A stretch of DNA of 64,000 nucleotides from Macrostomum lignano (Eukaryota), in contig NIVC01001269.1 in the NCBI GenBank assembly GCA_002269645.1, forward strand, positions 62,001 through 126,000, read 5' to 3'. Under the pieces are notes generated by a model. That model ran no database searches and was not told the origin of the DNA. It worked only from the letters and a program-made list of their open reading frames with translations. How positions within the stretch are numbered: position 1 is the stretch's first letter; each line of letters opens with the position of its first letter. This document shows, piece by piece, positions 40,113 through 64,000 of the stretch. Both the position numbers and the translations under genes were made by a program.

Positions 40113-40139
40113 TTCTTGCTGCTGTGGCATGCATAACAA

Positions 40140-43561: not shown

Positions 43562-43596
<35 letters not shown>

Positions 43597-43900: not shown

Positions 43901-44214
43901 GCTTGCCAGAAAAGAATGTTACGCGCTTTTTAATCTAGCTGAGATACTGGACCACTGAAAATTTTCCTACGAGTAAACTGCCCTAAATGAAAAGTAAATA
44001 AATGAATAAACGAAAATTTGACCTACAAAATCCCAAGCTGTCGTGATGATGCTGGCTTTATTAAAAACACCTGATACAATACACAAAATTAGTATTGATA
44101 GAACAGGCTTTCAAACGCCGACACAAATGCGACGCCGTAACGAAATGCGAAAGAGACAAGTACAGAACCATATGCTTAATTCCAAGCTATAATCAAGGAC
44201 ATACATATTGACAC

Positions 44215-45131: not shown

Positions 45132-48100
45132 TTAGGCCTGGGAAAACTCCACTACAGTTTGAACAAAACTATCGAAATCTTCAGAGACGACCTTAGCCGA
45201 CTTCTTAGCATTGATAATTTGGCACAATAACTCTGGTATTGGAGGAGCGGATGCTTGAACTGAGTCGCTATGCTCGGACAGCAGTTCGCCAGTGAGACGC
45301 AGCACCAACAGTTGAAGGTCGCCAATACCATCTTCATCATCATCATCAGCATCCTCGGCAATATTCGAATCGAATTCATTCGGCGAACAGCTGACAATAT
45401 GACGCAACGAATTGACAATCAAAGCCTGAGCTACAGAGCAGCTAGGCGTAGGACTCAAATTCAATAACAGGCTTAGCCTCAGAGAGGCGAGGCCAAGCAC
45501 TAGAATGGACAAGAAGTTGTTGGCACACAAACGATTATTTCCAGAGCCAATTGAAACAGTCAGATAGTCTGTCAGACTAGCTATCATGTCAGTCAGTTGT
45601 TGGCCATCAAAGCACAAGTTGGAGGCGTCCTCTTCAGCCGAGTGCATCTGACCCAGAGTGAGGTTCAGCAGCACATTCGCCAGAGGAGACAGGGCGCTGG
45701 ACGATGAGGCAGCAAGTTGACGAGCGAGACAGTCAGACATCAGGTAGCGAACTAACTGGCGACTACTCTTGCGAAGAAGCTCGACGCCATCGTCTGAGGA
45801 GGTGAGGGTGCACAGGTAGGGCAGGGCGGCTCTGCGGGAGGTTCAATAAGCATGTCTGAGGTTATAGTCTAGTGATAATATGATTTATGATTTAGATCTA
45901 TTTTAGATCTATGATTTATGATTTATTAATAAATCTTCATGGATAGCAACCCCATTTTAATTTTTTATCCTTAATTGAGCACTTGCAGATCATCACATAT
46001 CTACATAGACTGAGTTACCTGGCAACGTCATCAGCATCCTCAGAATCCACGGCATCGTTCGGTCCTTCAGCTCCCATCAGCCAGCCAAGCAGCTGTACAA
46101 ACGCGCCCCGCTTACGACAGCTCTTGCTGTTGAATTCATCATCATTGCCCACCCGTTCGCGAATCTGTTCGGCAAGTTCATCGCCTTCGCTCAGCCACAG
46201 GCAGAGGCAGCGGGAGCAGGCGGCCAAGAACAGTCGCTGAGGCCGATTCGAACCAGCGTAAGCAGCTGTCAGCGGCGATTTCATAACTGCAGAAGCTCCA
46301 GCAACAAGACGATCCAATAGAAGATCAAAAGCGTCGCTGAGACGAGTAAGTAATCGCTCAAAATAATCCGGTCGTTGATCGGCGCCACGGTCCGATTGCT
46401 GCTGCTCCAACAATCGGCGAATAGTTTCTTCTAGTAGAACGAAACAAGCGCCAAGAGTTTCGCGATGCTGCGAACTCGCGATTACAAGTTCAAATGCTCG
46501 GTCGCTTTCGTCCGCAAGATTTAATCGGACATCAACTTCCAAAGCGGCCAACGAGCCGATCAGGTAGAGCAGCTCCGATTCGGCCACTGCACCAGAGCTC
46601 GCCTTGCTATCAACAATGTCCGCAAGACCACGCTTGCTAGCCGAAGCTAAATTGGCTAATAGCGACAGACTGACAGCTCGAAGACTGCGGTTGCCAAGGA
46701 GACTGGGCATCAAAGGACGCAACTGCTCGGTTAGACGACCAGACGAAATTGTGACGCAGTTTGGCGTAACGTAGGACAACAGCTGACTGACGAATTCGAG
46801 GATATCCGCCGTGCCGGGTAATTGGGAATCCTCGGTCGGGGATTTCCCTTGGGATTCCCCGCTTGAGGATTTCCCTTGGGATTCCCCGGATTGGGTTTTC
46901 CCTTGGGAATCATCAGTTGGGGATTTCCCTTGGGATTCCCCACGTGAAGAGTTCCCTTGATCGGACTGCTTTGTCTTGGACAGTTCAGCTTGAAACTCTT
47001 CGACAAGCTCAGCGGTTAGGTTAGAGAGCAGCTTGTCAACAGATGGAGCCACTCGATCAAGCATGCCGGCAAAAGCGCACCGATCCAACGCCACCAGCGC
47101 TAGCCTCAGGCTGCTATCCCACTCCGGCAGCCGGTTGAGCACAGATTCCACAAGAGTTCCCACTAGCGGCGAATCTGCCAAGAACTCTCTGCACTGATCC
47201 AGCTCTAATCCACAGGCGATAAAGTACAGCGCCCGGTGAAGCTGCTCAACAAGTTGGCGAATCTCCTCGGATTGAGCGGCAGCCGGCTGCCACCGAGCCA
47301 GGCATCGGCAGAGGCCATTCAGCAGGTCGGGGAAATCCGCCCGGCCAGCCAGTCCGGCCAAGTCTCGCTCGGCCAAGTGTCCGATAATCGAGGCCGCGGC
47401 GGAGACGTGCGCCAGCGTGTCCGCATCGTCGCCGTCGCCCTCGCCGTCGCGGTCGACTAGAAGCAGGCGTAGCAAAAATTTGGTATCGATATGAGCAAAT
47501 ACTGAGCTGCTCTCGGGGGCGCTGAATGCGGCCAGCTGACGGGCGGTGAGCAGTAGAGCGGCCACCCGGTCATTGTCTGTGCCGGCTTTGGCCAGCGCCT
47601 TAGCGCATAGAGCTGCGGCTGATTGGCGCGACTGAAAAGTAAATTAGTAATATTTCAATATGCTGCTAAGAATCCTAATCGCACTACTTATAGCAGCATG
47701 GTCGGGAAACTCAACAGAGGTCTGCAAAAAGCCTCTCCAACCAGCCCTCGGGTCCTTTGAAACTTCACAATAACAATCCGGCCTGTGTCGCTTCTCCCCC
47801 TTCTCTCATCTCTCCTTTCTTGTCTCTTCTCTTCCCATTCTCTAATCTCTCTTTTCTCTCGCCCTTCTCTCTTCTCTCTCCATTCTATCTTCTCTCCTCT
47901 CTTCTCTCTCCATTCTATCTTCTCTCCTCTCTTCTCTCTTCTCTCTCCATTCTATCTTCTCTCCTCTCTTCTCTCTTCTCTCCCCTCTTCTCTCATCTCT
48001 CCTTTCTTCTCTCCCATTCTCTCTTGTCTCCCCCGCCCCTTCTCTCCCCCTTTCTCTTTTGTCTCCTCTCTTCTCTCATCTCTCCCCTCTTCTCTCATCT

Positions 48101-48364
48101 CTCCCCTATTCTTTCTTCTCTCCCCTCTTCTCTCTTCTCTCCTCCCTTTGCTCTTTTCCTCTCTATTCGCTTCTCTCTTCTCTCCTCCCTTTATCTTCTC
48201 ACTTCTCTCCCCTCTTTTCTCTCTCTCCTTATCTCTACTTCGTTTCCATCGCTCGTCTTATCTCTCAGTTCTTCGCCTCTCTCGCAATCTTACCTTTCAT
48301 TGCTAATCTTCTTCTCTCCTCTATCTCCCCTTTTCCTTCCCTCACTCGCCTGGCCCACAGCCAT
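45132..48364 (-). CDS. NCDN: Neurochondrin, about 775 aa
   Basis: Exons 48364-48350 (MAVGQ, tentative), 47631-46019, 45831-45132. CAKALAKAGTDNDRVAALLL resembles neurochondrin CL..L..A.ND..FAALLL; RCLCLWLSEG resembles R.LG.WLAEE; AALPYLCTLTSSDDGVELL resembles LLP..CHLT..D..RE.L. Confidence 0.8.
47785..48340. repeat. CT-rich low-complexity tract in NCDN intron 1
   Basis: Directly visible. Confidence 0.9.
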
Positions 48365-48725
48365 GAGCTGGATTCTTTATCTAGCGCTTGATATAAGTCT
48401 GCCGACCCCTGTCACATAGCAGAGGGGTGCAAATGAAAAAAATTCACAAAAGACGTTTAAAATCGTGAATTAGCTTTAAATGTGTGCTTATTATTTAAGA
48501 AAATTCAGTGTAAAAATATTATTAAAACTTATTATTCTGTAAATACAGAATTAGATAGAATACCGGATATGAAGCATGCAAACTATTGAAACAAAATCAT
48601 TCAATGGCAATGATTTATATATAAAAATCTGAATCTAATGGAATAATCAAACTCTTATTATAGAAATGCTTACTATTGATTCGAATAGCTCTTTACGAAT
48701 AGATAACGCTCGCAATAACTAATAT

Positions 48726-51700
48726 TTATGGTTGCTGCCGTCCGTTTTTTTGCCGCGCGTAAAGCTGCTGCAGTGCTTTCATTTGTTCCACCAATGAGGC
48801 CAATTCTGATGGTGACTTCTGGGAATGGAAAATGTAATTGCTACTCATTTAGCGACTCATTTGACTACTCATTTATCTACTCATGAAGCTACTCATTTAT
48901 CTACTCCTTTAGCTACTGATTTAGCTACTGATTTAGCGACTCATTTGACTACTCATTTATCTACTCCTTTAGCTACTGATTTAGCTACTGATTTAGCGAC
49001 TCATTTGACTACTCATTTATCTACTCATTAAGCTACTCATTTATCTACTCCTTTAGCTACTCCTTTAGCTACTGATTTAGCGACTCATTTGACTACTCAT
49101 TTATCTACTCATTAAGCTACTCATTTATCTACTCATTTATCTACTCATTTATCTACTCCTTTAGCTACTGATTTAGCAACTCATTTGACTACTCATTTAT
49201 CTACTCATTTATCTACTCCTTTAGCTACTCATTTAGCGACTCATTTGACTACTCATTTATCTACTCATGAAGCTACTCATTTAGCGACTCATTTGACTAC
49301 TCATTTATCTACTCCTTTAGCTACTCAGTTATCTACTTATTTAGCTACTCTGTTATCTACATATTTAGCTACTCAGTTATCTACTCATAAAGCCACTCAG
49401 TTATCTACTCATATAGCTAGTCAGCTATCTACTTATTTAGCTACTCAGTTATCTACTTGTTTATCTACTCATTTATCTACTCATTTAGCTACTCATTTAG
49501 CTACTTATATATCTATTTAGTTATCTATTATCTACTCATTTATCTACTCATTTAGCTACTCATTTAGCAACTAACTAATAAAAGGAAGGGCTAAGCTTAC
49601 TGTATTCGCTTCAACAGACGCTTCAGTGAAAGCAGCTGATACTACTAACTCAGTAGAATAAGCAGGTGTTGCAGATGACTTCACTTGCTTAGGAAATTTT
49701 CGAGTGTCAGAAAGCAGGCCAACTCTAAATAGTAAATTGTCCAACAGCAATTCGTAACTCTGCAATGGGAAAATAGGGGAAACCGTGAGAGAGGGGATCA
49801 AAAGAAAACAGGGAAATGAAACAGAAGAAATGAGGATTAAGAAATTTCCATTTTACAACGGTCAAGGCCAAAGGCAGACAGGAAGGAAGGAGAGAGGCTG
49901 ACTGTGAAGCAAAAATGAGGCAATTATCTCCTACATCAAGTTGAGCATGCTAAATTTCCTCCCGTTGTGGGGAAATTACTAATTTTATCATAATCGATTA
50001 GATAGAAACTCGGTTGACCTTACTACCAGTAAGGGGAATTATTACTTTTACTAATATGACATATGAAGTCTTACATGCACTTAAGCCAAGTATCAAAGCA
50101 AATTAATAAATAGCGAGGAAATTTCGGGTTTAAAGAGCAATCTAGTTGCTAGGGTAGCTTCAATATGCCTAAAATAGAATTAGATCTCATATTTCTTTGC
50201 CCCGTGTAGCCATCAATAGAAACAACAGCTTTGGTAACACAGTAATGTGATCTGTCAAATTCTTTCCATTGTGCACAAAAAACAGCTATATGCCGATTTC
50301 CTAACATTGCGCGCTATTTAACAATAGTTTAAATGGGGACAGGGCAAGGACTAGCTGCCTCATGATGGTATATGAGGGGATTCTGTGTGAACGTCTGTAT
50401 GAGTGCGTGCGTGCCGATAGTATTGGCGCGCTTCTATGTGCTCAGGAGTCAGCGGAATGACCTACCGGAAAGATCTATGACCTACCGGAAAGATCTATGA
50501 CCTACCAGTACCAGAAGATCTATGACCTACCAGTACCAGATCTATGACCTACCAGTACCAGAAGATCTATGACCTACCAGTACCAGAAGATCTATGACCT
50601 ACCAGTACCAGAAGATCTATGACCTACCAGTACCAGAAGATCTATGACCTACCAGTACCAGAAGATCTATGACCTAACAGTACCAGAAGATCTATGACCT
50701 ACCAGTACCAGATCTATGACCTACCAGTACCAGAAGATCTATGACCTACCAGTACCAGAAGATCTATGACCTACCAGTACCAGAAGATCTATGACCTACC
50801 AGTACCAGAAGATCTATGACCTACCAGTACCAGAAGATCTATGACCTACCAGTACCAGAAGATCTATGACCTACCAGTACCAGAAGATCTATGACCTACC
50901 AGTACCAGAAGATCTATGACCTAACAGTACCAGAAGATCTATGACCTACCAGTACCAGAAGATCTATGACCTACCAGTACCAGAAGATCTATGACCTACC
51001 AGTACCAGAAGATCTATGACCTACCAGTACAAGAAGATCTATGAACTACTAGTACAAAAAGATCTATGACCTACCAGTACCAGAAGATCTATGAACTACC
51101 AGTACCAGAAGATCTATGTATGAAACGCCGGGAAGACATACGACCTATCAGAAAGGTTGGTCTATGACATATCAGACAAGTTTATGAACTACGAGAAGAA
51201 TCTATGACCTACAATAAAGATTTTTGACCTAACTGGATGAACTATATGAACTAACAGGAAGAATGGAAAATCTATGACCTACCTTAAGAAAGAAGGAAAA
51301 ATCTTTGCCCCTGACAAATTAACTCGAATAAGGTAATTTAATTTATAAAAACTGAAGAAAGAATGATTTTAAGAAAATACGTTTTCGTTTTCAACTTTTA
51401 ATTAAAGAATTCGCATAAATAATTTCTGTCCCTGGCTTATATTGGCTGCCCCGAACGGGGGGCACTGGATTGCTAGTCCATATACTATAAATGGTCTTAT
51501 CTAAAAATTGGAATTACTGACAAAAAACTACAATAAACAAACTCTAGGGGAAAGAAAACAGCAAGACACGTGCTTGAAGCGGACTTGACCTTTAACTGCA
51601 CTGCGAAGTTTTAACCGGATAGACAACAATTTTTTTAATACTAGAGCAAAATGTAAGGAAAATATTTGGTTGGACCAATTAATTTGGGCTGCAAACTTTA

Positions 51701-54209
51701 CTTCAAAATATTCGGAAACGACTACAAGTATTTATTCTACATGCACTCCTCGAAGTTTATTTATTATAAACAGTTCCTCTTAAGCTCAAGTCAGCCTAAA
51801 GAATTTTATGCAAAAAAACACAAAGTAAATTCCCTCGTTCTTGTAAGAGTACCCTGAGGAATTCTCCTCTGAGCTTTTTAATGTCAAAAAGATTAAAAAA
51901 TTTCCTTGAAATCCTAAATTCATAGGGGAGCTGCTGAGATGTCAAGGCTCACGGGAAGGGGGAATTGCTGAGATGTCAAGGCTCACGGGGGGGAATTGCT
52001 GAGATGTCAAGGCTCACGGGGAGGGGGAATTGCTGAGATGTCAAGGCTCACGGGAAGGGGGAATTGCTGAGATGTCAAGGCTCACGGGAAGGGGGAATTG
52101 CTGAGATGTCAAGGCTCACGGGAAGGGGGAATTGCTGAGATGTCAAGGCTCACGGGAAGGGGGAATTGCTGAGATGTCAAGGCTCACGGGGAGGGGGAAT
52201 TGCTGAGATGTCAAGGCTCACGGGGAGGGGGAATTGCTGAGATGTCAAGGCTCACGGGGGGGAATTGCTGAGATGTCAAGGCTCACGGGGAGGGGGAATT
52301 GCTGAGATGTCAAGGCTAACGAGGAGGGGGAATTGCTGAGATGTCAAGGCTAACGAGGAGGGGGAATTGCTGAGATGTCAAGGCTAACGAGGAGGGGGAA
52401 TTGCTGAGATGTCAAGGCTAACGAGGAGGGGGAATTGCTGAGATGTCAAGGCTCACGGGAAGGGGGAATTGCTGAGATGTCAAGGCTAACGAGGAGGGGA
52501 AATTGCTGAGATGTCAAGGCTAACGAGGAGAATTGCTGGGACGTCGAGGCTCATGTGGGTTTCTCACATGCCTTGAGCCACAGCTCATAGAGGATCTGCA
52601 TCTGATATCGTAGGCTAGATTGATTAGGCTTTTTTCTTCAAACATCACTTCCCTTGATAGATTAACACTAGCGAACGGACAAGGTCAAAGAAACCAACAT
52701 GTAGTTTATTAAACAAAATTTATTGCCTCCCCAACCCCAACAGCAGAGCCAAGAATGCTAGCTTAGTAACTAAATTTTTAGATACTCTCCTGAGAAGTTC
52801 CTCAACAACACTTACCGATGCATTCAGCAGTCCCCGATGCCTCATAGTGTACAGAGCATCCCAAACTGAACGCTGCCGCTCAGTCAGTGACGGATAAACC
52901 TGCATAGACTTCGAACCCGTCACGGACTGACATGCCAGCGGCGTCTCTAGCAACATTTTGTACTGACAGACTGGAGACTCGACCACTGAGGCCAGCCGAG
53001 TGGCCCTGGAGCAGGCCAATTCGACTACAGTTCGTCTCGAATCGCGTCCGTGGCCGCAGGGCACGCCGTTTGGCATTGCCATGGCAACTAGGCGGCTTTC
53101 GTTGGCGCCACTGTGATCCACAAGCCAGCCGTCCCACACTCTGGGTAATAAGATGGATTAGGGATTCTTGACAGATGCTTGAGATGGGGATCTGGGGAAT
53201 CAGGTGTCTGTGATTGGGACCTGGGGAATCAGATGTCTCAGATGGGGGATCTGCGTCTGGGGAATCAGGTGTCTTAAATAGGAATTTGAAGAATCAGATG
53301 CCTGAGATGGGGATGGGGGTAATCAGAGGCGTGACGTGTAGAGAATCAGAGGCCTGGTATCTAGGGAATCAGAGGCCTGACATCGAAGGAATCAGAGGCC
53401 TAAAATCTAGGGAATCAAAAGCCTGGCATCTAGCGAATCAGAGGCCTGACATCTAGGGAATCAGAGGCCTGACATCTAGGGAATCAGAGGCCTGACATCT
53501 AGGGAATCAGAGGCCTAAAATCTAGGGAATCAGAGGCCTGACATCTAGGGAATCAGAGGCCTGACATCTAGGGAATCAGAGGCCTGACATCTAGGGAATC
53601 AGAGGCCTGACATCTAGGGAATCAGAGGCCTGACATCTAGGGAATCAGAGGCCTAAAATCTAGGGAATCAAAAGCCTGACATCTAGGGAATCAGAGGCCT
53701 GACATCTAGGGAATCAGAGGCCTGACATCTAGGGAATCAGAGGCCTGACACCTAGGGAATCAGAAGCCTAAGAGAACACTGACACAAGAGAATCAGTAGC
53801 CAATAATCACTCACCCAATAACACCATGAAAGCCATCTAAAGCGCGATAGACCACATCGCGCTGAGTAGCATTGTCAAATGGGCACAGTGTATACTCATA
53901 CTGCGCCCCAACTTGAGTTGAATAGCATCGACCAAACAGACCAGAGATAAGTCTAGCTGGACCACTAGGAGGCTTAGCTGTTACAGGCTTCTTCGGCTGC
54001 TGTGGTTGTTGTGGCTGTTGTTGTTGTTGTTGAAAATAAGTGCGCGGCGAATCAAGAACTTTTATTGGTATTTGATGATTAGAAGCTGCCAGGTCATTGT
54101 GCAACTGCGAGCCCATGAGCATAGGCACCATTGCAAATGCAGAAATGTTAATACTATGAGGCATAAAGCTAACTAACAGAACAGTAGTGCACATCACAAA
54201 CTTTATCAT
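48726..54209 (-). CDS. GNPTG: GlcNAc-1-phosphotransferase gamma subunit (MRH/PRKCSH domain), about 323 aa
   Basis: Exons 54209-53815, 53140-52816, 49759-49601, 48818-48726 (972 nt, phases 2/0/0). Signal peptide; IKVLDSP; SGPARL..L.GRC..YEYTLCPFDNATQ; GVIGVWDGW; VELACSRATRLASVVESPVCQY..ETPLAC; VYPSL; SYELLLDNLLFRVGLL. Exons 3-4 are less certain. Confidence 0.88.
48838..49570. repeat. 12-bp minisatellite (GCTACTCATTTA) in GNPTG intron 3
   Basis: Directly visible. Confidence 0.93.
50457..51120. repeat. 25-bp minisatellite (TATGACCTACCAGTACCAGAAGATC) in GNPTG intron 2
   Basis: Directly visible. Confidence 0.95.
51935..52545. repeat. About 34-bp minisatellite (CTCACGGGAAGGGGGAATTGCTGAGATGTCAAGG) in GNPTG intron 2
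   Basis: Directly visible. Confidence 0.95.
53345..53770. repeat. 23-bp minisatellite (TCAGAGGCCTGACATCTAGGGAA) in GNPTG intron 1
   Basis: Directly visible. Confidence 0.95.
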
Positions 54210-56082
54210 AATGCAATTCTGGTTGTTCCTGTAATGTATTAAATAAATTTTCCAGTGGTTTTGTCTCTGTGTATCCAAATTTCAGTACAAGAAACTTTTA
54301 CAAAGTTGGAGACATAAGAGAATTATAACATAGTAAAATGAGCTGACTCATAGAAATTTTGCAGGGGCTAAGATAAATACTATTCACTAAGCCAATAACT
54401 AAGTCAATAAGCTAAGGTTAAAACTCTTCAACTAGTCTTTGGTATAAATTCTTTAACAATAAAGTTTAATATAGCAGACAATGTAATACATATAATGTCA
54501 TCCAATCTATTTTAAAGTATATCTCACTAGTAGCTCCATATATGCAGAACCTTTGAAATTAAACTGGCTATATAACTGACTAAAAACCTACCCAATCCCT
54601 AATGACTCTCTATAATAAGTGATATAAGTTGGTTTGCTAGTTTGCTTCTAATGAAATTTGGGTTGCTTTATATTCACTTTTTAAAATAATTTTTAAGTTA
54701 TTTATTATATTATCAGAATAATGAATATAATCAATAAATTGTAAGCATAGCTATACAACCATTCCAGAATCTTAGACCTTTAGTTTTGGCATCTAGGTTT
54801 TTGTGCCGAATTGGTGCCATGGTACCATTTTTAATTTTTTCTAGAAATTTCAATTTTTTTATCATTTAAAGAGTTGGCAAGTCTTGGCAAGACAAGTTAA
54901 AATAATGTCCACTATCTTATCTAATTGTCAATTTAACAATGTTATCTCATTTAATCAATATACATTATACCCCTTGCTAAACTCTAGAAAGTTACATATA
55001 TGCCAAAATTTTCTAGCATAGACTACCATTATAAACTTTGGATGTTTTGATATACCACTTTGAGTTCAAGAAATTTTTGGCATATAACTTTAAGCTTAAA
55101 ATTTTTGGCATAGAAACTGCAATAATTTGTTTTAAAAATATATGCATACATTTTAACAAGAAAAGTTTTTTTAAAAATATATAAAAGATTAGTAGTTTTC
55201 TAAATAAAAATTTATTTTTTATCTGTTTAAAATTTGTTGGTAATAACATTTTTGCTTTTTATAAGATTTTATTTGATTTCAATTGTTTCTTCATTGCCAA
55301 AACTACAAAAATATCCTTTATTGTCTCAAATGAAAAAAGTGACATACCATTAGTTTACTAAAATAAGATACATTTTTCAGCATATTATGCTCCACCATCT
55401 GAATATTAGACTCTGCTAAATTGAGCAATCTGTTCATCTATTTAATGATTTTATAATAAAGCCTATATATCTTCTAGAATGAATAAACATTTTTAGAAAG
55501 CATATTTAAAAAGCATTAAAAATTTAAAAAAACAAACTCAATTAACAAGGAAAAGCTAATATGCATTGACTTATACAATTATACTAAATGAATTAAGAAG
55601 TAAAGATTGTGCACAATTGTTTTTCCTTTATTGTTTAGGGATAATTATTCCCAATATATAGGATTGCCCAATTTTAGGTAAAGACTAGAAAAAATTAAAG
55701 GGAGAACCAAGCAAATTTTTACCAAAAATAGAGCCATCAATCTGCCTTCCTTTTTCTTAAATCTTTACTTTCTAGAATCTCTCCTTTCAAAAAAAATTGG
55801 TTGCATTACTGCATGGTTTGATAAGACAAAAGGAAGTTAATAATAAATAAATAAAGTTCCAAGAAAATTTAATTGAAGATTATTTTCCTGAATTAATTTA
55901 TTTTAGATGAAATAAAGTAGAAGAAAGCATATATTGGTATATACTACTAAGAAATAAAATGTTGGAAGGAAAAAAATATAAAGTAAGGCCTATGTCTCAA
56001 AACATAGGCCCTATATAAGAGCCATGGCCCTTTGATCTTGGAAATGCCTAGGACTATAAGGAAGATATATACAATATATATA

Positions 56083-57356
56083 CCGGGTGTTGCAAAAAAA
56101 CTTGACACTTCTAATTCCCTATATAAATAGGCCTATATAGCATCAATATCAGATATTTTATAGTCATTTCGAAGTGCTCTTTCTAAGCATTCATTTGCTC
56201 TTACAGCGAAGCCAATTGCATCTGCACAGTCTGAAATGGAAGCAAGAAGGCACAGAGTGTCGACCTTACTGGACGCGGGCATGCCTGTGGCGCAGATTGC
56301 CAAGAGCATTGGCATCAGCCGGCAGGCAGTCTATGACATCAAAAGGCGACTGGATGACGGCAAAGGGCTCGAAAGACAGCCAGGATCGGGCAGGCCTCCA
56401 AAACTCAACTTGGCCGAAGTCAGGCAAATTTTCATGGACAACCCAATGGCCAAAATGTCCGAGGTGGCCGAGGCGGCAGGTGTTAGCAAATCAACTGTCT
56501 CTAGAGCTGTCAAGAGTGCTGGAGGCACTTCCCTTCGCCAAGTTGAGCGGCCACTGCCGTCAGATCAGCAGCAGCAGATACGATTGGAGCGGTCCAAGAA
56601 GTTGCTTAACAACTTGAAAAGCTTTGGCAGTCGCATTCTGATTTTCTCGGATGAGAAGACATTCACCATTGATCCCGTGTTCAACCGGCAAAATGATCGA
56701 TTTGTCAGCTTCAGCGAGGAGGATTGAGCCCGCCGGTATGTTTCCACCACCAAGCATCCGGCCTCCGTGATGATGCTTGGCGTCGTAGCCTCCAGCGGTG
56801 ACGTCATGCCTCCTGTTTGGTTCTCGCAAGGGTATCGCCTAAATGCGGCCGACTACAAGGCAGTTCTACAGAAGAAAGTGCTCCCATGGATCACTCGAGT
56901 CACTAAGGGGAAGCCTTATGTGTTCTAGCAGGACGGAGCACCTGCACACACGGCTATCACCGTGCAGAGCTGGATGGCACAGAAGATGTCGTTTTGGGAC
57001 AAATCGTTTTGGCCATCCCAGTCACCAGACCTAAACCTGCTGGACTTCGCCATTTGGGCGCGTGTAGAGTCTGAGGCCTGCGCTATGCGACACCCAAGCG
57101 TTGAGGCGCTCAAAGCCAGTGTGTCTGAGAAATGGACGAACATGCCACCCGATTTCATAATCAGTGTGTGCTCCAGCTTCCGGTCACGCCTGGAGAGAGT
57201 TGTTTCGGCCAACGGCGGCTACATTGACTGAACATGTGCTACTTATGCCTATGTTTATATTTAATAGCTTTTTACTTGGTTTTAATCATGCTTCCCTTTC
57301 TAGGGGGCCTTTGTTTCTAGTAAACAGATTTGTCAAGTTTTTTTTGCAACACCCGG
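56083..57356 (+). mobile_element. Full-length Tc1/mariner element of maT (DD37D-like) type, 1274 bp
   Basis: About 25-bp TIR CCGGGTGTTGCAAAAAAACTTGACA and its complement; TA TSD (56081-82, 57357-58). Confidence 0.95.
56236..57231 (+). pseudogene. maT-like transposase with two in-frame stops
   Basis: HTH region with GSGRP, FSDEK, HPASVM.LG, QDGAPAH, WPSQSPDLNLLD; TGA 56725-27 and TAG 56926-28, no frameshift. Confidence 0.92.
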
Positions 57357-57784
57357 TACCAGTATGCCTAGTAATTAATATATAGCCAGATTTAAGAAGA
57401 TAGTAAGAATAGTAAGAATATCATTACTAATATAGAGTAAGAACACTACCAATATAAGGGATAACTAATACTTAAAATAAATAACTGAGATAAATAGACT
57501 TACTAGTTACTAAGAATAATTTTTGGATTAATACTCAGATATATAGACTAACATTCAGAATTTTAGATTAATTCTAAAAAAAGATTTGACTATAATTACA
57601 ACTTTGGTACTACCAATAAAATGATTATTCTAGAAGATAGACTAGCAATCTTTGCCCCCTGTTGGGGGACATCTGGATAGAATCTTTGCTCTCCACAGGT
57701 AACAAAAAGATAGCCAGATAAAGCCTTCTCAAAGACAACAGACAAACTGTTCAAATAAAGTGCAATGCAAAAAGAAATCATCCC

Positions 57785-58400
57785 AAGACAGCAAGCATCC
57801 CCTAGATAGCAAGCATCCCCCAGATTGCAAGCATCCCCCAGATAGCAAGCATCTCCCAAATAGCAAGCATCCCCCAGATAGCAAGCATCCCTCAGATAGC
57901 AAGCATCCCCCAAATAGCAAGCATCCCCCAGATAGCAAGCATCCCCCAAATAGCAAGCATCCCCCAGATAGCAAGCATCCCCCGTCCCAGATAGCAAACA
58001 TCCCCAAATAGTAAGCATCCACCAGACAATAAGTAGCTAGTGCAACAATTTCCTTAGCTCTATAGTGGCTCCTTTGAAATTGGCATGACGCTTACTTTTA
58101 CGTTTGAAATTGTGTATCTTGTTTGTTTGACATGGTGGCTCTTTTATGTTCGAATGGGGTGGCTTTTTATGCTTGACATGGTGGCTCTTTTATGTTTGAC
58201 ATGGTGGCTCTTTTATGCTTGGCATGGTGGCTCTTTTATGTTTGACATGGTGGCTCTTTAATGTTCGACATAGTGGCTCTTTAATATTCCCCCAGATAGA
58301 AAGCATTCCCCAGATAACAAGCATCCCCCAAACAGGAAGCATCCCCCCTCCTAGATAGCAAGCATCCCCCAGATAGCAAGCATCCCCAAATAGTAAGCAT
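57785..58400. repeat. 18-bp minisatellite (GATAGCAAGCATCCCCCA) in two blocks, part of a local about 385-bp duplication
   Basis: Blocks 57785-58020 and 58290-58400, each followed by the same unique about 125-bp segment. Confidence 0.85.
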
Positions 58401-59690
58401 CCACCAGACAATAAGTAGCTAGTGCAACAATTTCCTTAGCTCTATAGTGACTCCTTTAAAATTGGCATGACACTTACTTTTAAGTTTGAAATTGTGTATC
58501 TTTTATATTTGACATGGTGGCTCTTTAATGTTTGACATGGTGGCTTTTTAATGTTTGACATTGTGGCAAGCATTGAGCCACATTGATGACATGTGGCTCT
58601 TTTAGGTTTGAAATGGTGGCTCTTTAATGTTTGACATGGTGGCTTTTTAATGTTTGACATAGTGACTCTTTTATGTTCTATATGGTGGCTCTTTTATGTT
58701 CAACATGGTGGCTCTTTTAGGTTTGAAATGGTGGCTCTTTAATGTTTGACATGGTGGCCTTTTAAACATCTTTTATGTTCAACATGGTGGCTCTTCTATG
58801 GTTGACATGGTGGCTCTTTAATGTTTGACATGATGGCTCTTTTATGTTTGACATGGTGGCTCTTTAGTGTTTGATAAGGTGGCTTTTTTAGGTTTTAAAT
58901 GGTGGCTATTTAATGTTTGACATGGTGGCTCTTCTATGTTTGACATGGTGGCTCTTGTATGTTCAACATGGTGGCTCTTCTATGGTTGACATGGTGGCTC
59001 TTTAATGTTTGACATGGTGGCTTTTTAATGTTTGACATTGTGGCTCTTTTAGGTTTAAAATGGTGGCTCTTTAATGTTTGACATGGTGGCTTTTTAATGT
59101 TTGACATGGTGGCTCTTTAATGTTTGACATAGTGACTCTTTTATGTTCTATATGGTGGCTCTTTTATGTTCAACATGGTGGCTCTTTTAGGTTTGAAATG
59201 GTGGCTCTTTAATGTTTGACATGGTGGCCTTTTAAACATCTTTTATGTTCAACATGGTGGCTCTTGTATGTTCAACATGGTGGCTCTTCTATGGTTGACA
59301 TGGTGGCTTTTGAATGTTTGACATAGTGGCTCTTTAATATTCTGCATGGTGGCTCTTTAATGTTCGACATTGTGGCTCTTTAATGTTCCTCATGGTGGTT
59401 CTTTTGTTTTATATGGTGGCTTTTTTATGTTTGACATGGTGGCTCTTCTATGTTTGACATGATGGCTCTTTAATGCTTAACATGGTGACTCTTTTATGTT
59501 TTAAATGGTGGCTCTTTAATATTTGACAAGTTGGCTCTTTAATGTTGGACATGGTGGCTTTTTAATGTTCAACATAGTGGCTCTTTAATATTCTACATGG
59601 TGGCTTTTTAATGTTAGACATGATGGCTCTTTAATTTTTGACATGGAGTCACATATATGTTTGAAATGGTGGCTCTTTAATGTTTGACAT
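58120..59690. repeat. 23-bp degenerate minisatellite (TTGACATGGTGGCTCTTTAATGT)
   Basis: Directly visible; variants TTCGAC, TTTGAC, TTCAAC, CTTAAC and ATGGTG/ATAGTG. Confidence 0.92.
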
Positions 59691-59750
59691 TGTGCTTTTA
59701 TGTGTTTAGCATTTTGTGTTTTTAATGTGTTTTAATAAAAAAATCTTTTT

Positions 59751-59820
59751 GCACTACTAAGATTCGAACCCAGGTTGCTGCATTAGCAGTCCAGTCTGTT
59801 CGCATCTATGCTATCCCTTG
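59751..59820 (-). pseudogene. tRNA-derived relic (SINE head or tRNA pseudogene)
   Basis: Reverse complement has A-box-like TAGCATAGATG and B-box GGTTCGAATC; T-stem pairing broken by C>T-type changes; no intact cloverleaf or CCA. Confidence 0.45.
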
Positions 59821-60299
59821 TCAATTGGAAAACATGAATTGTGGCCCTTTTAATTAAATTCTTATAGCAAATCAGTTAGAGTAAAAAGTTATGACATAAT
59901 CAATTTCTCAGTCAGCTAGTATCAGTGTCAATTTAAGTTAGCAATATTGTTACGCAATTTCAATCAAGTTGTATGTGCGTTTCTTCGGCACTGTTTTCAA
60001 CTTGTTGTGATGCAATCTTTATCAGAATTGAAATTCAGTCAGTCAGGTTTTTATCTAGCATTCTTACAATGCATTTAAAGTCGAAAAAATTGCTTGACCT
60101 TTGCAAAAAAGCATGTTTTTCAAATGTTTAATCCCTTTAACATTGAGCAATTTCTTAGCCAAGATGCACGTACTGTCCTAGGAAAATTTCTGATTGAATG
60201 GTGCAAGTTTGAAGAAAATCAGTTGAGCTGTTTTTTCTGGAATCTATCTTATACATACAGACAACTCATTTTTAGTAGATAGGAAGGAAGGAAGGAAGC

Positions 60300-60576
60300 C
60301 ATACATGCGCAACTGCTGGCCAACCTGGCCGATCTGGCCACCGTAAATTGTGGTGGACCAGGGGTAAGTCGCAAAAATGCCCACCTCAAAAAATACAGAC
60401 GTAGTACTAATTAGATGACGAGGCATTTAGCCCTTATAGGACAGTCATAGTTACTCCTGCCGTTTACCCAAAATTACGTTAATGTTGCTCTAGGGTTTCT
60501 TCCACAGGTAAGTCGCATTTTTGGTCAAAAAGTAAGTCGCATGGCCAGTGTAAATCAGGGGGGTTGCGCATGTATG
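60300..60576. mobile_element. MITE, 277 bp (hAT- or P-like)
   Basis: 14-bp perfect TIR CATACATGCGCAAC/GTTGCGCATGTATG; 8-bp TSD AAGGAAGC (60292-99, 60577-84); three internal GTAAGTCGCA motifs. Confidence 0.8.
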
Positions 60577-60690
60577 AAGGAAGCCATAGTCCTACTACAA
60601 CTTTGGTGGCATTTTTATAGATGAAATTAAGGACAGAAGAAACCTCTGTGGTCTTATATGCTATATCAACTTTGGTAGCAACATCTAATA

Positions 60691-62032
60691 CGAAGGTTGT
60701 TTAGAAAGTTTATAGACAAACATGAACTATTGTTAAATAAGCAACAAAACTGAAAACCTTAGTCATTGACCTTTTTAATGTATGTGCCCTTGAGGCACAC
60801 ATACTTGTGCCAGTGCTCTGGTAGCTTTTTAATCCCTGTAGCAAATAATTCTTTGGGGGTACTTCTAACCCACTGGCTAATGGCAGAGGCTAAGGCTTGT
60901 ATGCTGCCATAATAGTAACCTCAGAGTGACTCCTTAATCCACCCAAATAGCCAGTAGTTGCTTGGTGCTAGGTCTGGCAAGTAGGGTAGGTGCAGCAATA
61001 GCTCGAAGCCCAGGCTGGAGATGGCAGCCATTGTTGCTTGGCTGGTATAGGGCCTAGCATTGTCCTGCTATAGCAGGATCCCCCTAGTCAAATTGCCTTG
61101 GCACTTAGTCTTGATGGCTTGGTGCAACTTTTTTAGCACTTGGATATAATAAGCATTAGTAATGGTAGTGCCACATGGAAGCCAGTTGATGAGCAGGATG
61201 CCCTCCTTGTCTTAGAAGATGGTGGCCATCTGCTTTCTAGCCAATAGTGCAGCTAGGGCCTTCACTAGGGTGGGCTCTCTAGCTGCTTTCCAGATACTAC
61301 TCTGTATCTTCAACTTTGGCTCACTATAATAGATCCACGACTTATCCCTAGTCACAATTCAATCCAAAAAGTTTGGGTCATTGTGGTAGGCCTGCAGGAG
61401 CTGCTGATATGCATGGACTTAGTCACACTGCTGATCATCTGTCAAAAGCTTTGGAACCTAACGAGCAAAAACTCGTGACATCCCAAGCTTGGCTGTAAGA
61501 ATTTCGTAAACTGCTATAGGTGATATATCCACAGTCTCTACCAGTTTAGGCACAGTGATCTGGCAGTTGACATCAAGTGCTTGACGCACACACTTGATGT
61601 TGAAAATGTTGACCATGGTGGCTAGCCTTCCATTGCATGGTAGATCTTTGATTGTCTCTCAGGCCCAGTCATCCTCAAACTACTGTACCTACCTACTTAT
61701 TAACAATTGACTTCGAAGGGGCATCTTTACTATATGCTATATGCAACTTGCAAACAATAATAGCCTAGATCACTTCCTTCTTTCCACAAGAACCAAATTA
61801 TGCTTTGCTTGGCTTCTTTGTCTTTTTCCATAGTGCAAAAACAATAGGTAACTTAAAATTACTATTGCAAAAAATAATATAACTAAGCATATTTAACTGC
61901 ACTAGGCCTACTATTAAAAGCTCTAGGACATAAGTTAGGTTCTGTCTATGGCCTAAAGTATGGTGACTTGTCTTAACTGCCTTTTGTTTAGAATAAAATA
62001 TGTTTGTCCACAAACTTTCTGAACAACCCTCA
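60691..62032 (-). mobile_element. Full-length DD34D mariner element (1342 bp), heavily mutated
   Basis: TIR CGAAGGTTGTTTAGAAAGTTT versus TGAGGGTTGTTCAGAAAGTTT (reverse complement of right end); TA TSD at 60689-90 and 62033-34. Confidence 0.9.
60759..61831 (-). pseudogene. Mariner transposase pseudogene with many stops
   Basis: MEKD...IIWFLWKEG, DAPSKS, AR*VPKLLTDDQ, IVTRDKSW (TGDESW), *QDNARPYT (DNARPH), HLPYLPDLAPSNY (HPPYSPDLAPSDY); 34 residues between the second and third acidic positions. Confidence 0.92.
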
Positions 62033-62110
62033 TATCAGGCCTAGACATAGTTAAAGAGAGAAAAAACAGAGAGCACTAGGCCTATTATAGCTATATTGGT
62101 GACATCCATG

Positions 62111-62459
62111 CAGGGTTTTTTGTGAGCAGAGTGTGCATATGCACCTTAAATTTTAAAATTGCACCCTGAAATTAAAAAAGTAGGTGCGGTTTAGGTGCAG
62201 TCTTATAACAATTTTTCTTTAAACTTAAAGGCTTAACCATGCTTAAGCTATTTTTCATGCACTGCCTTAAAATATAAAACAGACAAGAGGTCAAGGCATT
62301 CTTTGTACAAAGATGTATAGACATAAGACATGTCTAAACATTCCCAGTTGTCTGAAACAAGACTCAAAGAGAAATTGCACTCTGAGCCTTAAAATCGCAC
62401 CTTGAAATTTGGCACAAGGTGCGATTTTGCACCTTGTCTCTGGCGAAAAAAAACCCTAG
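62111..62459. mobile_element. MITE, about 350 bp, with CAGGGTTTTTT termini
   Basis: CAGGGTTTTTT ... AAAAAAACCCTAG; flanking direct repeat CATCCATG (62103-10, 62460-67); internal GCACC/GGTGC subterminal repeats. Confidence 0.65.
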
Positions 62460-63497
62460 CATCCATGACAGGAAGTTTACCCCTAGCACAATTATAATTT
62501 ATAGGTCTAATATAAAGTATAATACTAATAGGTTTTGATAAAATATATTTTATCTATAAAAAAAATAGATTATTCATTCTATATATGCATATATACTTAA
62601 GTGTAGAAATCATTTATTCTGATTTTGCAGCAATCATTATACTTTCTTATGTTAGGCCTACTTTACTAGGAGCCAGTGTATATCTAAGGTGGCCACATAC
62701 TAAGATAAAGATGGCCATAGGCGATAGGCCTAGGCCCTAGCTCTAATTGGCTTGTGAAGATTTCAACCACTCTCAATTACTATTGGCTGTTTCTAGCTCC
62801 TAGGGCCGACCTAGGGTGTAGTGTAGGCCCCTAGTAGAGAGGACCATTGCATATGTCCCTCAAGTCTTAGCTATAATTTCCTCATTTGAAACAATTTATT
62901 ACTGGTAGAGCCCGGCCTATGTCCTAGCAAATAATGTTTATCATTGCATTAGGGCTAGGCTGCCTAGGCACTATTATTTTTCTTGACCTGGCTGACCTGA
63001 TTGAGATTTTCATGTTCATATTCAACAACTAACAAATTCGGTCATTGGCAGACAGGCCGCTAGTGCTGAGATCATCACTAGCTAGGCCTAGCCGCTTTGG
63101 TCAAGCAAAATTGCCAAAACCCGCTGATTTCTTCAGATTCAAGGAGGACAACTAAGGACAAGATAAGAACAATTGTCCTCCTTCGATTTTCTTCCTGCTG
63201 ATTTACATGAAACATTTGCCTATTTAAACAACATTTGCTTCCTTAAAAGATAGAAGGATTTTAACAAAGCTGCGATTAAACAAAAAAACATAATGCAAGT
63301 AAGTTTCCTGTGTTTGTAAAATTTTAGTAGGCCTAGTGTTTTTTTGCATTGTGGTAACTTGAAAAAAATTGATTAATTTTGTATCTAGGCCGTTTTACTA
63401 AGCTCCTAGGGCTTTCATGAATATAGCTTTCATGAATGAACTAATTTCTATGCACACTCAGCCCAATAGGCAATGTATCACCATTAGCCTTTTACCT

Positions 63498-64000
63498 AGT
63501 CTGGGTGAAGTCCTGCATGTCAATTTTCAGCGACAGAGAGCAAGCAGAACAGAAGTACTCGAAATCGAATATCAATCTAATACATTGTGGAGATAGGAAC
63601 ATCAGTTTTTCTCGAATAGTTCTCGAGCATGAAGCTTTGAGTTCGGTTTGAGTTATGATAATCGCTTAGTGTCTGGGTGAAGTCCTGCATGTCAATTTTC
63701 AGCGACAGAGAGCAAGCAGAAGTACTCGAAATCGAATACCAATCTAATACATTGTGGAGATAGGAACATCAGTTTTTCTCGAATAGTTCTCGAGCATGAA
63801 GCTTTGAGTTCGGTTTGAGTTATGATAATCGCTTAGTGTCTGGGTGAAGTCCTGCATGTCAATTTTCAGCGACAGAGAGCAAGCAGAAGTACTCGAAATC
63901 GAATACCAATCTAATACATTGTGGAGATAGGAACATCAGTTTTTCTCGAATAGTTCTCGAGCATGAAGCTTTGAGTTCGATTTGAGTTATGACAATCGCT
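63498..64000. repeat. 167-bp satellite, 3 copies visible, runs off the window end
   Basis: CTGGGTGAAGTCCTGC at 63501, 63673, 63840 (periods 172 with a 5-bp insertion, then 167); near-identical units. Confidence 0.93.

What the first reader, a model, noticed from the sequence alone, without database searches (positions are those of the whole stretch)
54300..63480. RIP-like C>T hypermutation at CpA as well as CpG in a sharply bounded, repeat-rich domain of an animal genome
Seen: in the DD34D mariner nearly every deviation from conserved motifs can be explained by C:G>T:A transitions, including non-CpG ones. Examples: TGG>TAG (61693, 61458), GAT GAG>GAT AAG (DESW>DKSW), CAG>TAG before QDN, CAT>TAT (PH>PY), many CTA Leu codons, ACC GGG>ACT AGG (CG>TA), TCG>TTG, C GAC>C AAC. 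Its two TIRs differ at three sites, all C>T type, one at CpA. The 23-bp repeat has TTCGAC/TTTGAC/TTCAAC/CTTAAC variants, and the surrounding DNA is rich in CTA/TAG and poor in CpG by eye, while genes a few kb away are CpG-rich. Known: CpA>TpA conversion of repeats is the fungal RIP signature; animal methylation decay normally gives CpG>TpG/CpA only. Inference: a repeat- or heterochromatin-targeted cytosine mutator, or non-CG methylation decay, acts on this domain. Ancestral codons are inferred from motif consensus.
Basis: partly seen in the sequence, partly recalled or inferred. Interest (0 to 1): 0.85.

Follow-up and report, generated by a model that had tools for sequence, protein, structure and literature searches.

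The report
Non-CpG cytosine decay in flatworm transposons
Old transposon copies in this flatworm (Macrostomum lignano) genome have lost cytosines by C-to-T change at CpG and also, about ten times less often, at CpA/CpT sites, in a pattern that matches the sequence preferences of a DNMT3-type DNA methyltransferase rather than a fungal RIP-like mutator, which points to germline non-CpG methylation of transposons in an invertebrate.

Summary
The window comes from the flatworm Macrostomum lignano. The core observation holds. Against a consensus built from other genomic copies, the mariner at about 60,688-62,035 (minus strand) shows these C>T rates:
- CpG: 42%
- CpA: 23-28%
- CpT: 6-10%
- CpC: 3-5%
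- T>C, for comparison: about 1%

Changes fall equally on both strands and do not form strand-coordinated runs.

The effect is not special to this domain.
- Seven other lineages of the same family, a second mariner family (15 lineages) and a young Tc1-like family all show the order CpG >> CpA >= CpT > CpC >> T>C.
- Relative to its other substitutions, the window copy is not more C>T-biased than its relatives.
- A 98%-consensus Tc1-like copy and a CpG-rich satellite sit undecayed inside the domain.
- Neighbouring and unrelated gene loci show a flat spectrum.

Non-CpG hot spots favour [A/C]CAG, CTG and TACA and disfavour G at -1 and -2. This mirrors the published flank preferences of DNMT3B, and the CpG:CpA:CpT:CpC ratio (100:12:5:4) resembles its in vitro ratio (100:17:7:6).

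The genome encodes DNMT1, DNMT2 and an ADD-domain DNMT3. I found no RID-like methyltransferase and no APOBEC-like gene.

Best reading: transposon-targeted germline methylation with DNMT3-type non-CpG spill-over, followed by deamination. RIP is not supported. No methylome data could be checked.

The parts
60688..62035 (-). Decayed mariner (DD34D/N) copy, family A. It carries 105 C>T/G>A changes among 158 differences from the family consensus and has multiple stop codons.
   Evidence: CpG o/e 0.14, CTAG o/e 2.4.
60688..60722 (.). Right-hand terminal inverted repeat of the mariner (window + strand). It differs from its partner at about 5 positions, all C/T or G/A.
62001..62035 (.). Left-hand terminal inverted repeat of the mariner.
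56081..57358 (+). Young Tc1-like (DDE_3) transposon, 98% identical to a consensus that has an intact ORF. Its two premature stops come from CGA>TGA and CCAG>CTAG. It is undecayed although it lies inside the 'domain'.
   Evidence: CpG o/e 0.75.
54300..56080 (.). AT-rich (26% GC) mosaic of old repeat fragments with almost no CpG left (o/e 0.03). Pieces match many other contigs at 70-82% identity.
57782..58408 (.). 18-bp minisatellite (two blocks, 57782-58026 and 58288-58408).
58095..59694 (.). 23-bp minisatellite. Its variants TTTGAC, TTCAAC and TTCGAC reflect decay of one CpG in the unit.
   Evidence: CpG o/e 0.08.
60300..60576 (.). MITE-like element with terminal inverted repeats. There are at least 8 diverged copies among the fetched loci.
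62111..62462 (.). Second MITE-like element with 20-nt inverted ends. One further copy (84% identical) lies in locus L010.
63499..64000 (.). 167-bp satellite whose units are 97% identical. CpG o/e is 1.04, so it is undecayed.
53811..54281 (-). Terminal exon region of the neighbouring minus-strand gene. Alignment with the homeologous contigs C166 and C6 stops at about 54,260, which is the 'sharp' left boundary.

Best explanation
The window shows the mutational footprint of transposon-targeted germline cytosine methylation in Macrostomum lignano.

Proposed mechanism (inferred):
- Transposon-rich, gene-poor DNA is methylated mainly at CpG.
- The de novo enzyme, a DNMT3 with an ADD domain, also methylates CpA and CpT at roughly a tenth of the CpG rate. 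It prefers [A/C]CAG, CTG and TACA and avoids G at positions -1 and -2.
- 5-methylcytosine deaminates spontaneously to thymine.
- Each inserted copy therefore loses CpG first, then CpA and CpT, on both strands and site by site, in proportion to its age and to how strongly its locus is methylated.
- Old copies become AT-rich, CpG-free and rich in CTAG (from CCAG/CTGG) and in stop codons.

It begins where a conserved gene ends.

Shown here: the context-specific substitution spectrum, its restriction to transposon loci, its coupling to CpG decay, and the presence of DNMT1 and DNMT3.

Inferred, not shown: that CpA and CpT are actually methylated in the germ line, and that DNMT3 is the enzyme responsible.
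For: SPECTRUM IN THREE INDEPENDENT TRANSPOSON FAMILIES OF DIFFERENT AGE
- Mariner family A, window copy: CpG 0.42, CpA 0.23-0.28, CpT 0.06-0.10, CpC 0.03-0.05, T>C about 0.01.
- Mariner family A, seven other lineages: CpA 0.087 against CpC+CpT 0.028 (p=3e-5) and T>C 0.007.
- Mariner family B, 15 lineages: CpA 0.021, CpT 0.021, CpC 0.006, T>C 0.002. CWG exceeds CWH with an odds ratio of about 1.9 (p=1e-3 to 1e-4).
- Young Tc1-like family: CpG 5.4%, CpA 0.64%, CpT 0.26%, CpC 0.21%, T>C 0.07%.

CONTROL
- A null simulation with CpG-only hypermutation gives equal CpA, CpC, CpT and T>C rates.

NO BURST SIGNATURE
- Both strands are hit equally and there are no runs: 59 observed against 53.5 expected.

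SPECIFIC TO TRANSPOSON LOCI
- Homeolog triplets at transposon loci: CpG 2.25% against non-CpG 0.46% (p=7e-11), and CpA above CpC+CpT (p=0.04).
- DNMT1 and DNMT2 gene loci are flat: CpG 1.0%, CpA 0.56%, CpC 0.78%, CpT 0.75%.
- The gene next to the domain shows no CpG excess and a transition:transversion ratio of about 1.3.

COUPLED TO CpG DECAY AND TO LOCUS
- In family B, per-copy CpG decay correlates with CpA/CpT decay (rho=0.65, p=0.008), while CpA/CpT decay does not correlate with other substitutions (rho=0.03).
- Rates differ among copies (p=1e-7 in family A, 8e-5 in family B).
- CpA/CpT decay correlates negatively with CpG o/e of the flanking DNA (rho -0.67 and -0.77).

MATCH TO DNMT3 ENZYMOLOGY
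- The CpG:CpA:CpT:CpC ratio is 100:12:5:4. Human DNMT3B in vitro gives 100:17:7:6 (PMC7672481).
- Flank effects: the base after CpW is best as G; position -1 favours A or C over G (0.075 against 0.038, p=6e-9); position -2 favours C or T over A or G; TACA is mutated at 25/99 against 295/4320 for other CpA sites.
- The recurrent hot sites are mostly [A/C]CAG.
- DNMT3B prefers T(-2), A(-1), G(+1), disfavours G at -1 and -2, and its best CpA substrates are TACAGN.

ENZYMES PRESENT
- DNMT1 (BAH plus methyltransferase domain), DNMT2, and DNMT3 (ADD plus methyltransferase domain; E=1e-95 to human DNMT3A) are each present as three homeologs.
- Reviews state that M. lignano keeps DNMT1 and DNMT3 and has low-level 5mC (PMC11292947; PMC9246332; PMC10658182).
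Against: - No methylation data were available here, so non-CpG methylation in M. lignano is not shown. Reviews describe only 'low' 5mC in adults.
- The recent (homeolog-triplet) CpA excess is modest: 1.6-fold, p=0.04.
- In family B CpT equals CpA, whereas DNMT3B prefers CpA over CpT by more than 2-fold.
- Position -2 prefers C at least as much as T, and position -1 prefers C as much as A, so the match to DNMT3B is good but not exact.
- The flank statistics rest on few distinct sites in two related elements. TACA amounts to about 9 sites, so its p-value is inflated.
- The correlation with CpG decay could partly reflect copy age, because the 'background' substitution counts are small.
- An enzyme that deaminates cytosine directly, with the same context preference, would leave the same footprint.
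Confidence: 0.6

Rival explanations
1. Cytosine deamination that is independent of methylation. Silent, late-replicating or AT-rich chromatin suffers more spontaneous C>U deamination, or repairs it worse. An intrinsic neighbour effect (3' A/T above C) then produces the CpA/CpT excess. CpG decay comes separately from CpG methylation.
For: - All non-CpG contexts, CpC included, show C>T well above T>C in transposons.
- The effect is strongest in AT-rich, CpG-poor neighbourhoods.
- In family B CpA equals CpT, which suggests a 'weak neighbour' effect.
Against: - The preference also depends on positions -2, -1 and +2, in a way that is not simply A/T-richness. C or A at -1 exceeds T at -1, G after CpW is best, and TACA and [A/C]CAG are hot.
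- That pattern matches DNMT3B.
- The rate ratios to CpG match DNMT3B in vitro.
Confidence: 0.17
2. An active cytosine mutator in an animal, RIP-like or editing-like. An enzyme deaminates cytosines in silenced or repeated DNA as a genome defence. Candidates are a DNMT acting as a deaminase when S-adenosylmethionine is scarce, or an unrecognised deaminase.
For: - C>T at CpA creates many stop codons (TGG>TAG, CAG>TAG) and recurs at the same sites in independent copies.
- TpA/ApT is 0.93-1.18 in the decayed parts.
- Transposon copies are driven AT-rich.
- If DNMT3 itself deaminated cytosine, it would leave the same flank signature.
Against: - CpG is hit far more than CpA.
- There is no strand coordination or clustering.
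- Accumulation looks clock-like: the CpA C>T to T>C ratio is about 9-12 in families that are about 1%, 5% and 15% diverged.
- The 97-98% identical multi-copy Tc1-like family is barely touched, even inside this domain.
- The RIP substrate index is 1.4-1.5.
- No methyltransferase-domain genes exist beyond DNMT1, DNMT2 and DNMT3.
- There are no hits to the APOBEC_N, NAD1 or NAD2 profiles (a weak negative).
Confidence: 0.08
3. Artefact. The apparent CpA>TpA changes come from a wrong consensus at decayed CpG sites, from subfamily structure, from misalignment, or from assembly errors.
For: - The simple majority consensus is wrong at some hypermutable sites. It carries three in-frame stops.
- It also inflates apparent T>C at TpG and TpA.
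Against: - Strict singletons with conserved flanks give the same result.
- Many events are also supported by the second family acting as outgroup.
- The null simulation shows no bias.
- Three families give the same order of contexts.
- Long-read assembly errors are mainly indels, not context-specific transitions (general knowledge).
Confidence: 0.04

Closest known systems
CpG decay of methylated transposons (5-methylcytosine deamination), as in vertebrate genomes
   Same: - Site-by-site C>T on both strands, dominated by CpG and increasing with copy age.
- Restricted to methylated compartments.
- DNMT1 and DNMT3 are present.
   Different: - A clear second tier at CpA and CpT: about 10% of the CpG rate and about 10 times the T>C rate.
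- In mammals non-CpG C>T is close to other transitions (my knowledge).
- In most invertebrates methylation marks gene bodies, not transposons (PMC11292947). Here genes look unmethylated and transposons look methylated.
DNMT3A/DNMT3B non-CpG methylation (mCAG in embryonic stem and germ cells, mCAC in neurons)
   Same: - The context order CpG >> CpA > CpT >= CpC.
- Preference for G after CpA or CpT, and for A at -1.
- Avoidance of G at -1 and -2.
- TACA(G) is hot.
- The flatworm enzyme has the ADD plus methyltransferase architecture and a Lys at the DNMT3B K777 position.
   Different: - Known as an epigenetic mark of particular mammalian cell types, not as a heritable mutational footprint.
- In the flatworm DNMT3 the Asn that contacts the CpG guanine (DNMT3B N779 / DNMT3A N838) is Cys. 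The consequence is unknown.
- Methylation itself was not observed here.
Fungal repeat-induced point mutation (RIP; RID/DIM-2 dependent)
   Same: - C>T transitions that inactivate transposons.
- CpA>TpA changes that create stop codons.
- AT-enrichment of repeats.
- Product index TpA/ApT above 0.89 in the decayed parts.
   Different: - CpG is the main target.
- No dependence on duplication and no bursts.
- No strand-coordinated tracts.
- The substrate index is not depleted.
- No RID-like gene.
- Young multi-copy repeats are intact.
AID/APOBEC editing of mobile elements
   Same: Excess C>T/G>A in mobile-element copies.
   Different: - The dependence is on the 3' neighbour (CpG, CpA), not on the 5' TC, CC or WRC motifs.
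- Both strands are hit equally and without clusters.
- The targets are DNA transposons.
- No APOBEC-like profile hit in the genome.

Membership tests
Fungal-type RIP | C>T mutation concentrated at CpA (or another non-CpG dinucleotide), exceeding CpG | tested here: not met
   CpG 0.42 against CpA 0.23 in the window copy. CpG 5.4% against CpA 0.64% in the young family.
Fungal-type RIP | Triggered by sequence duplication, so that young multi-copy repeats are heavily mutated | tested here: not met
   The Tc1-like family has at least 7 full-length copies that are 97-98% identical. Each copy shows only 4-15 singleton changes (differences unique to that copy) over the ~1.28-kb element, including the copy inside the domain.
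Fungal-type RIP | RIP indices: TpA/ApT > 0.89 and (CpA+TpG)/(ApC+GpT) < 1.03 | tested here: not met
   The product index is 0.93 for the domain and 1.18 for the mariner, so that criterion is met. The substrate index is 1.41-1.50, so that criterion fails.
Fungal-type RIP | Strand-coordinated tracts of C>T or G>A | tested here: not met
   51 C>T and 54 G>A are interleaved: 59 runs against 53.5 +/- 5.1 expected.
Fungal-type RIP | RID/Masc1-type cytosine methyltransferase homologue | tested here: not met
   The PF00145 search of the whole genome finds only three genes, each in three homeologs. They classify as DNMT1 (BAH domain), DNMT2 (CFT motif) and DNMT3 (ADD domain).
5-methylcytosine deamination footprint | CpG hypermutability and CpG depletion confined to a genomic compartment | tested here: met
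   Transposon loci: CpG 2.25% against non-CpG 0.46%. Gene loci: 1.0% against 0.70%. CpG o/e is 0.03-0.33 in decayed repeats and 0.67-1.0 in genes and young elements.
5-methylcytosine deamination footprint | Maintenance and de novo methyltransferases encoded in the genome | tested here: met
   DNMT1 and DNMT3 are found, in agreement with reviews.
DNMT3-type non-CpG methylation | Context order CpG >> CpA > CpT >= CpC, with G preferred after CpA, A at -1, T at -2, and G avoided at -1 and -2 | tested here: met
   This is met on the mutational footprint only. The ratio is 100:12:5:4 against DNMT3B's 100:17:7:6. The flank effects are and the reference values. Exceptions: C at -1 and -2 is as good as A and T, and CpT equals CpA in family B.
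DNMT3-type non-CpG methylation | 5-methylcytosine physically present at CpA/CpT in germ-line DNA | not testable with these tools
   No reads or methylomes are available. The primary paper with bisulfite data (Wasik 2015) is not held in the paper library.
AID/APOBEC editing | 5' neighbour motif (TC, CC, WRC) and clustered, strand-specific changes | tested here: not met
   The rate is governed by the 3' base; TCA is not elevated. There are no runs.
AID/APOBEC editing | AID/APOBEC-like deaminase gene present | tested here: inconclusive
   No hits for PF08210, PF18778 or PF18782. The controls cannot validate sensitivity, and split exons may be missed.
mariner (Tc1/mariner superfamily, DD34D) | Mos1-type HTH domain plus Transposase_1 domain, a D,D(34)D triad, short terminal inverted repeats and a TA target site | tested here: met
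   PF01359 (E=2.5e-17) and PF17906 on the consensus protein. There are 34 residues between the second D and the third position. That position is D in family B and N in family A, through GAC>AAC at a CpG. Inverted repeats of about 33 nt.

The most novel reading that the evidence does not exclude
M. lignano has a heritable cytosine-mutating genome defence, an animal functional analogue of RIP. DNMT3, or a partner enzyme, would not merely methylate [A/C]CAG, CTG, TACA and CpG sites in silenced transposons. It would actively convert them to T. This would permanently disable transposases through TGG>TAG and CAG>TAG stops and drive old repeats to AT-rich, CTAG-rich DNA.
Probability: 0.08. Interest if true: 0.9.

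Novelty: new variant of a known kind. Interest (0 to 1): 0.5.

Why it matters
Non-CpG methylation is usually treated as a plant feature, or as a mark of particular vertebrate cell types. Invertebrate methylation is usually described as gene-body CpG methylation.

The substitution spectra here predict three things for M. lignano:
- It methylates transposons rather than genes.
- It does so in the germ line.
- Its DNMT3 deposits enough CpA/CpT methylation, with a DNMT3B-like flank code, to leave a heritable mutational footprint and to erode transposons towards AT-rich DNA.

This is directly testable with existing or easily produced methylomes in a tractable regeneration model that already has RNAi and transgenesis. 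If confirmed, it would push a DNMT3B-like non-CpG specificity, and transposon-directed methylation, back to early bilaterian lineages.

It also matters practically. Transposon age estimates and consensus building in this genome need a correction for CpA/CpT as well as for CpG.

Tried and rejected
- Simple majority consensus. It is wrong at hypermutable sites, carrying three in-frame stops and inflating T>C at TpG and TpA. I replaced it with strict-singleton counting and checked that by simulation.
- First alignment of genomic copies. It mixed orientations and was redone with direction adjustment.
- Fetching more family-B copies with flanks and further repeat families. Only 20 family-B copies and 79 loci in total could be used, so no genome-wide RIPCAL-type survey was possible.
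- MITE family at 60,300-60,576. Copies are only 54-87% identical and about 300 bp long, which is too diverged and too short for a reliable spectrum.
- 23-bp array as independent evidence. The variants are not independent, because they spread by tandem duplication, and they are mostly CpG-type.
- tRNA-like stretch near 59,750. ARAGORN finds no tRNA.
- UV-type dipyrimidine damage. Rejected because CpC is the coldest context.
- Local melting in A/T-rich flanks. Rejected because T at -1 is not favoured.
- Two-step CpG decay as the source of TpA. CG>TG>TA and CG>CA>TA both still need a non-CpG step, and the simulation with dynamic contexts shows no excess.
- Wasik et al. 2015, the primary methylation data. 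The paper is not held in the library. No other paper with M. lignano bisulfite data was found, and none on RIP-like processes in animals.

Full report
ORGANISM AND SETTING

A long open frame in the window (46,015-47,643, minus strand) is 100% identical to a Macrostomum lignano protein. The genome is 764 Mb in 5,269 contigs. Most loci occur as two or three copies that are 96-99% identical, consistent with the known recent genome duplication in this flatworm (my knowledge).

The window has about 45% GC, many minisatellites, and CpG o/e varying from 0.13 to 1.4 between 2-kb bins.

WHAT LIES BETWEEN 54,300 AND 63,480

From left to right:
- AT-rich old repeat fragments, 54,300-56,080: GC 26%, CpG o/e 0.03.
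- A young Tc1-like transposon, 56,081-57,358: CpG o/e 0.75.
- 18-bp and 23-bp minisatellites, 57,782-59,694.
- A MITE-like element, 60,300-60,576.
- The mariner, about 60,688-62,035, minus strand.
- A second MITE-like element, 62,111-62,462.
- Then, from 63,499, a 167-bp satellite with CpG o/e 1.04.

The left edge is the end of a minus-strand gene. The two homeologous contigs align with the window only up to about 54,260. So the 'sharp boundary' is a gene/intergenic boundary, and the interior is a patchwork of decayed and undecayed pieces.

CHECK OF THE OBSERVATION

A search of the whole genome with the mariner found 47 matches. They form two groups:
- Family A: the window copy plus seven other independent lineages, 79-88% identical to one another.
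- Family B: 93-97% identical among themselves.

The family A consensus translates into a mariner transposase with Transposase_1 and Mos1 HTH domains and the 34-residue spacing.

The window copy differs from the consensus at 158 positions, of which 51 are C>T and 54 are G>A. C>T rates by 3' neighbour:
- CpG 0.42
- CpA 0.23
- CpT 0.10
- CpC 0.03
- T>C 0.01-0.05

I then counted only changes where every other lineage keeps the consensus base and the flanks are conserved. This gives CpA 17/60, CpC+CpT 7/131 (p=2.5e-5) and T>C 3/243 (p=1e-10).

A simulation in which only CpG is hypermutable, run through the same pipeline, gives equal rates at CpA, CpC and CpT and for T>C. The CpA excess is therefore real and not a by-product of CpG decay.

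THE EFFECT IS NOT SPECIFIC TO THIS DOMAIN

- The seven other family A lineages, on other contigs, show CpA 0.087 against CpC+CpT 0.028 and T>C 0.007.
- Family B (15 lineages) shows CpA 0.021, CpT 0.021, CpC 0.006 and T>C 0.002.
- The young Tc1-like family (7 copies, intact consensus ORF) shows CpG 5.4%, CpA 0.64%, CpT 0.26%, CpC 0.21% and T>C 0.07%.
- The ratio of CpA C>T to T>C is about 9-12 in all three families, although their ages differ by more than ten-fold. That argues for steady accumulation.
- The window mariner has a 2-4-fold higher absolute CpA rate than its relatives. It also has about 1.75 times more other substitutions. The ratio of CpA/CpT changes to background changes does not differ significantly among copies (p=0.13).
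Examples are CTGG>CTAG at the FWD tryptophan and at GACTGGGG, and CTGCAG>CTATAG or CTGTAG. These are hot spots, not local events. They explain the CTAG excess.

THE EFFECT IS SPECIFIC TO TRANSPOSON DNA AND COUPLED TO CpG DECAY

Recent changes can be polarised by majority among three homeologs.
- At transposon loci they show CpG 2.25%, CpA 0.59%, CpT 0.38% and CpC 0.34%.
- At the DNMT1 and DNMT2 gene loci the spectrum is flat: CpG 1.0%, CpA 0.56%, CpT 0.75% and CpC 0.78%.
- The gene adjoining the domain, compared with its homeologs, shows no CpG excess and a transition:transversion ratio of about 1.3.

Across family B copies, CpG decay correlates with CpA/CpT decay (rho=0.65, p=0.008). CpA/CpT decay does not correlate with other substitutions (rho=0.03). 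It correlates negatively with flanking CpG o/e.

One family A copy (L002/L003) has the usual background divergence but only 8% CpG decay and 0.8% CpA/CpT decay (p=0.0075). I cannot exclude that it is simply a younger insertion.

SEQUENCE PREFERENCE

- C>T and G>A are interleaved without runs.
- The +2 base matters. CAG and CTG are the highest contexts. CTA, CTC and CCN are the lowest.
- Pooled over both families, the rate is higher with A or C at -1 than with G (0.075 against 0.038, p=6e-9), and higher with C or T at -2 than with A or G.
- TACA is mutated in 25 of 99 lineage-sites, against 6.8% for other CpA sites. This rests on only about nine distinct sites, so the p-value overstates the evidence.
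- The most recurrent non-CpG sites in family B are mostly [A/C]CAG.

Published deep enzymology of human DNMT3B reports CpA, CpT and CpC methylation at 17%, 7% and 6% of CpG. It reports preference for T(-2), A(-1) and G(+1), avoidance of G at -1 and -2, and TACAGN as the best CpA substrates (PMC7672481). The footprint ratio here is 100:12:5:4.

ENZYMES

The C5-methyltransferase profile hits three genes, each in three homeologs:
- DNMT1, with a BAH domain next to the catalytic exons.
- DNMT2, with the CFT motif.
- A DNMT3.

A 790-residue gene model, 98% identical to the DNMT3 exon, carries the ADD zinc fingers and the full catalytic domain. It aligns with human DNMT3A at E=1e-95.

In the loop that reads the target site it has VTTKRCS where DNMT3A has ITTRSNS. 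This gives Lys at the DNMT3A R836 / DNMT3B K777 position, and Cys where DNMT3B N779 bonds the CpG guanine. Whether this relaxes CpG specificity is speculation.

No further methyltransferase-domain gene was found, so there is no RID/Masc1-like or chromomethylase-like candidate. The APOBEC_N, NAD1 and NAD2 profiles gave no hit, which is a weak negative.

INTERPRETATION

The most economical explanation is that transposon-rich DNA is methylated in the germ line, chiefly at CpG. A DNMT3-type spill-over onto CpA and CpT follows, and 5-methylcytosine deamination then erodes copies with age.

RIP fails on its defining features:
- target dinucleotide,
- dependence on duplication,
- strand-coordinated tracts,
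- substrate index,
- a RID-type enzyme.

APOBEC-type editing fails on context and on clustering.

A methylation-independent deamination bias in silent chromatin remains possible. It does not predict the DNMT3B-like flank code.

The key missing piece is direct evidence of CpA/CpT methylation. Reviews report only low 5mC in adults and state that genomic patterns are unknown in free-living flatworms. The primary paper is not held in the library.

VERDICT

The RIP-like, domain-targeted reading is not supported. It is a new variant of a known process and is readily testable.

Noticed in passing
window 5128-8310 (+): An uninterrupted 1,060-residue Ty3/gypsy-type pol frame (protease, reverse transcriptase, RNase H, integrase) lies in DNA with CpG o/e of about 0.9. 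It is apparently a young LTR retrotransposon. I observed it only and built no consensus.
   Followed up: no
window 880-1890, 12300-12900, 14390-18180, 24700-26200, 28430-28990, 39650-41280, 43180-43960, 47700-48400, 49116-49520: The window is unusually dense in long minisatellite arrays, several of them inside or next to genes. Introns of the DNMT1, DNMT2 and DNMT3 loci also hold such arrays.
   Followed up: no
window 63499-64000 (runs off the end): A 167-bp satellite with 97% identical units and CpG o/e 1.04 directly abuts fully CpG-depleted DNA. It is either very young, homogenised, or protected from methylation.
   Followed up: partly
window 56081-57358: The Tc1-like family has a consensus with an intact ORF of about 330 codons and at least 7 full-length copies that are 97-98% identical, so it may still be active. 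The window copy is disabled by two stops, CGA>TGA near 56,727 and CCAG>CTAG near 56,927.
   Followed up: partly
G000 contig C4239:25820-34951: Three identical family-B mariner copies sit at 3.9-kb spacing on one contig. This indicates a tandem segmental duplication rather than three insertions.
   Followed up: no
loci L031-L040; protein P0003: DNMT1, DNMT2 and DNMT3 are each present as three homeologous copies. The DNMT3 target-recognition loop reads VTTKRCS: Lys as in DNMT3B K777, and Cys in place of the guanine-contacting Asn.
   Followed up: partly
window 52500-54260 against G000 C166:289031-290755 and C6:771299-773023: The local search reported 91% identity between the window gene region and its two homeologs over this 1.7-kb segment. 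A global alignment of the fetched loci including their flanks gives about 81%. The two homeologs are 94% identical to each other. This suggests two rounds of duplication of different ages.
   Followed up: partly
mariner families A and B (loci L002-L030, L070-L079): All sampled mariner copies lie in low-GC (29-39%), CpG-poor (o/e 0.16-0.69) neighbourhoods. Both family consensus sequences already carry TAG at the conserved FWD tryptophan codon, because CTGG>CTAG recurs so often.
   Followed up: yes
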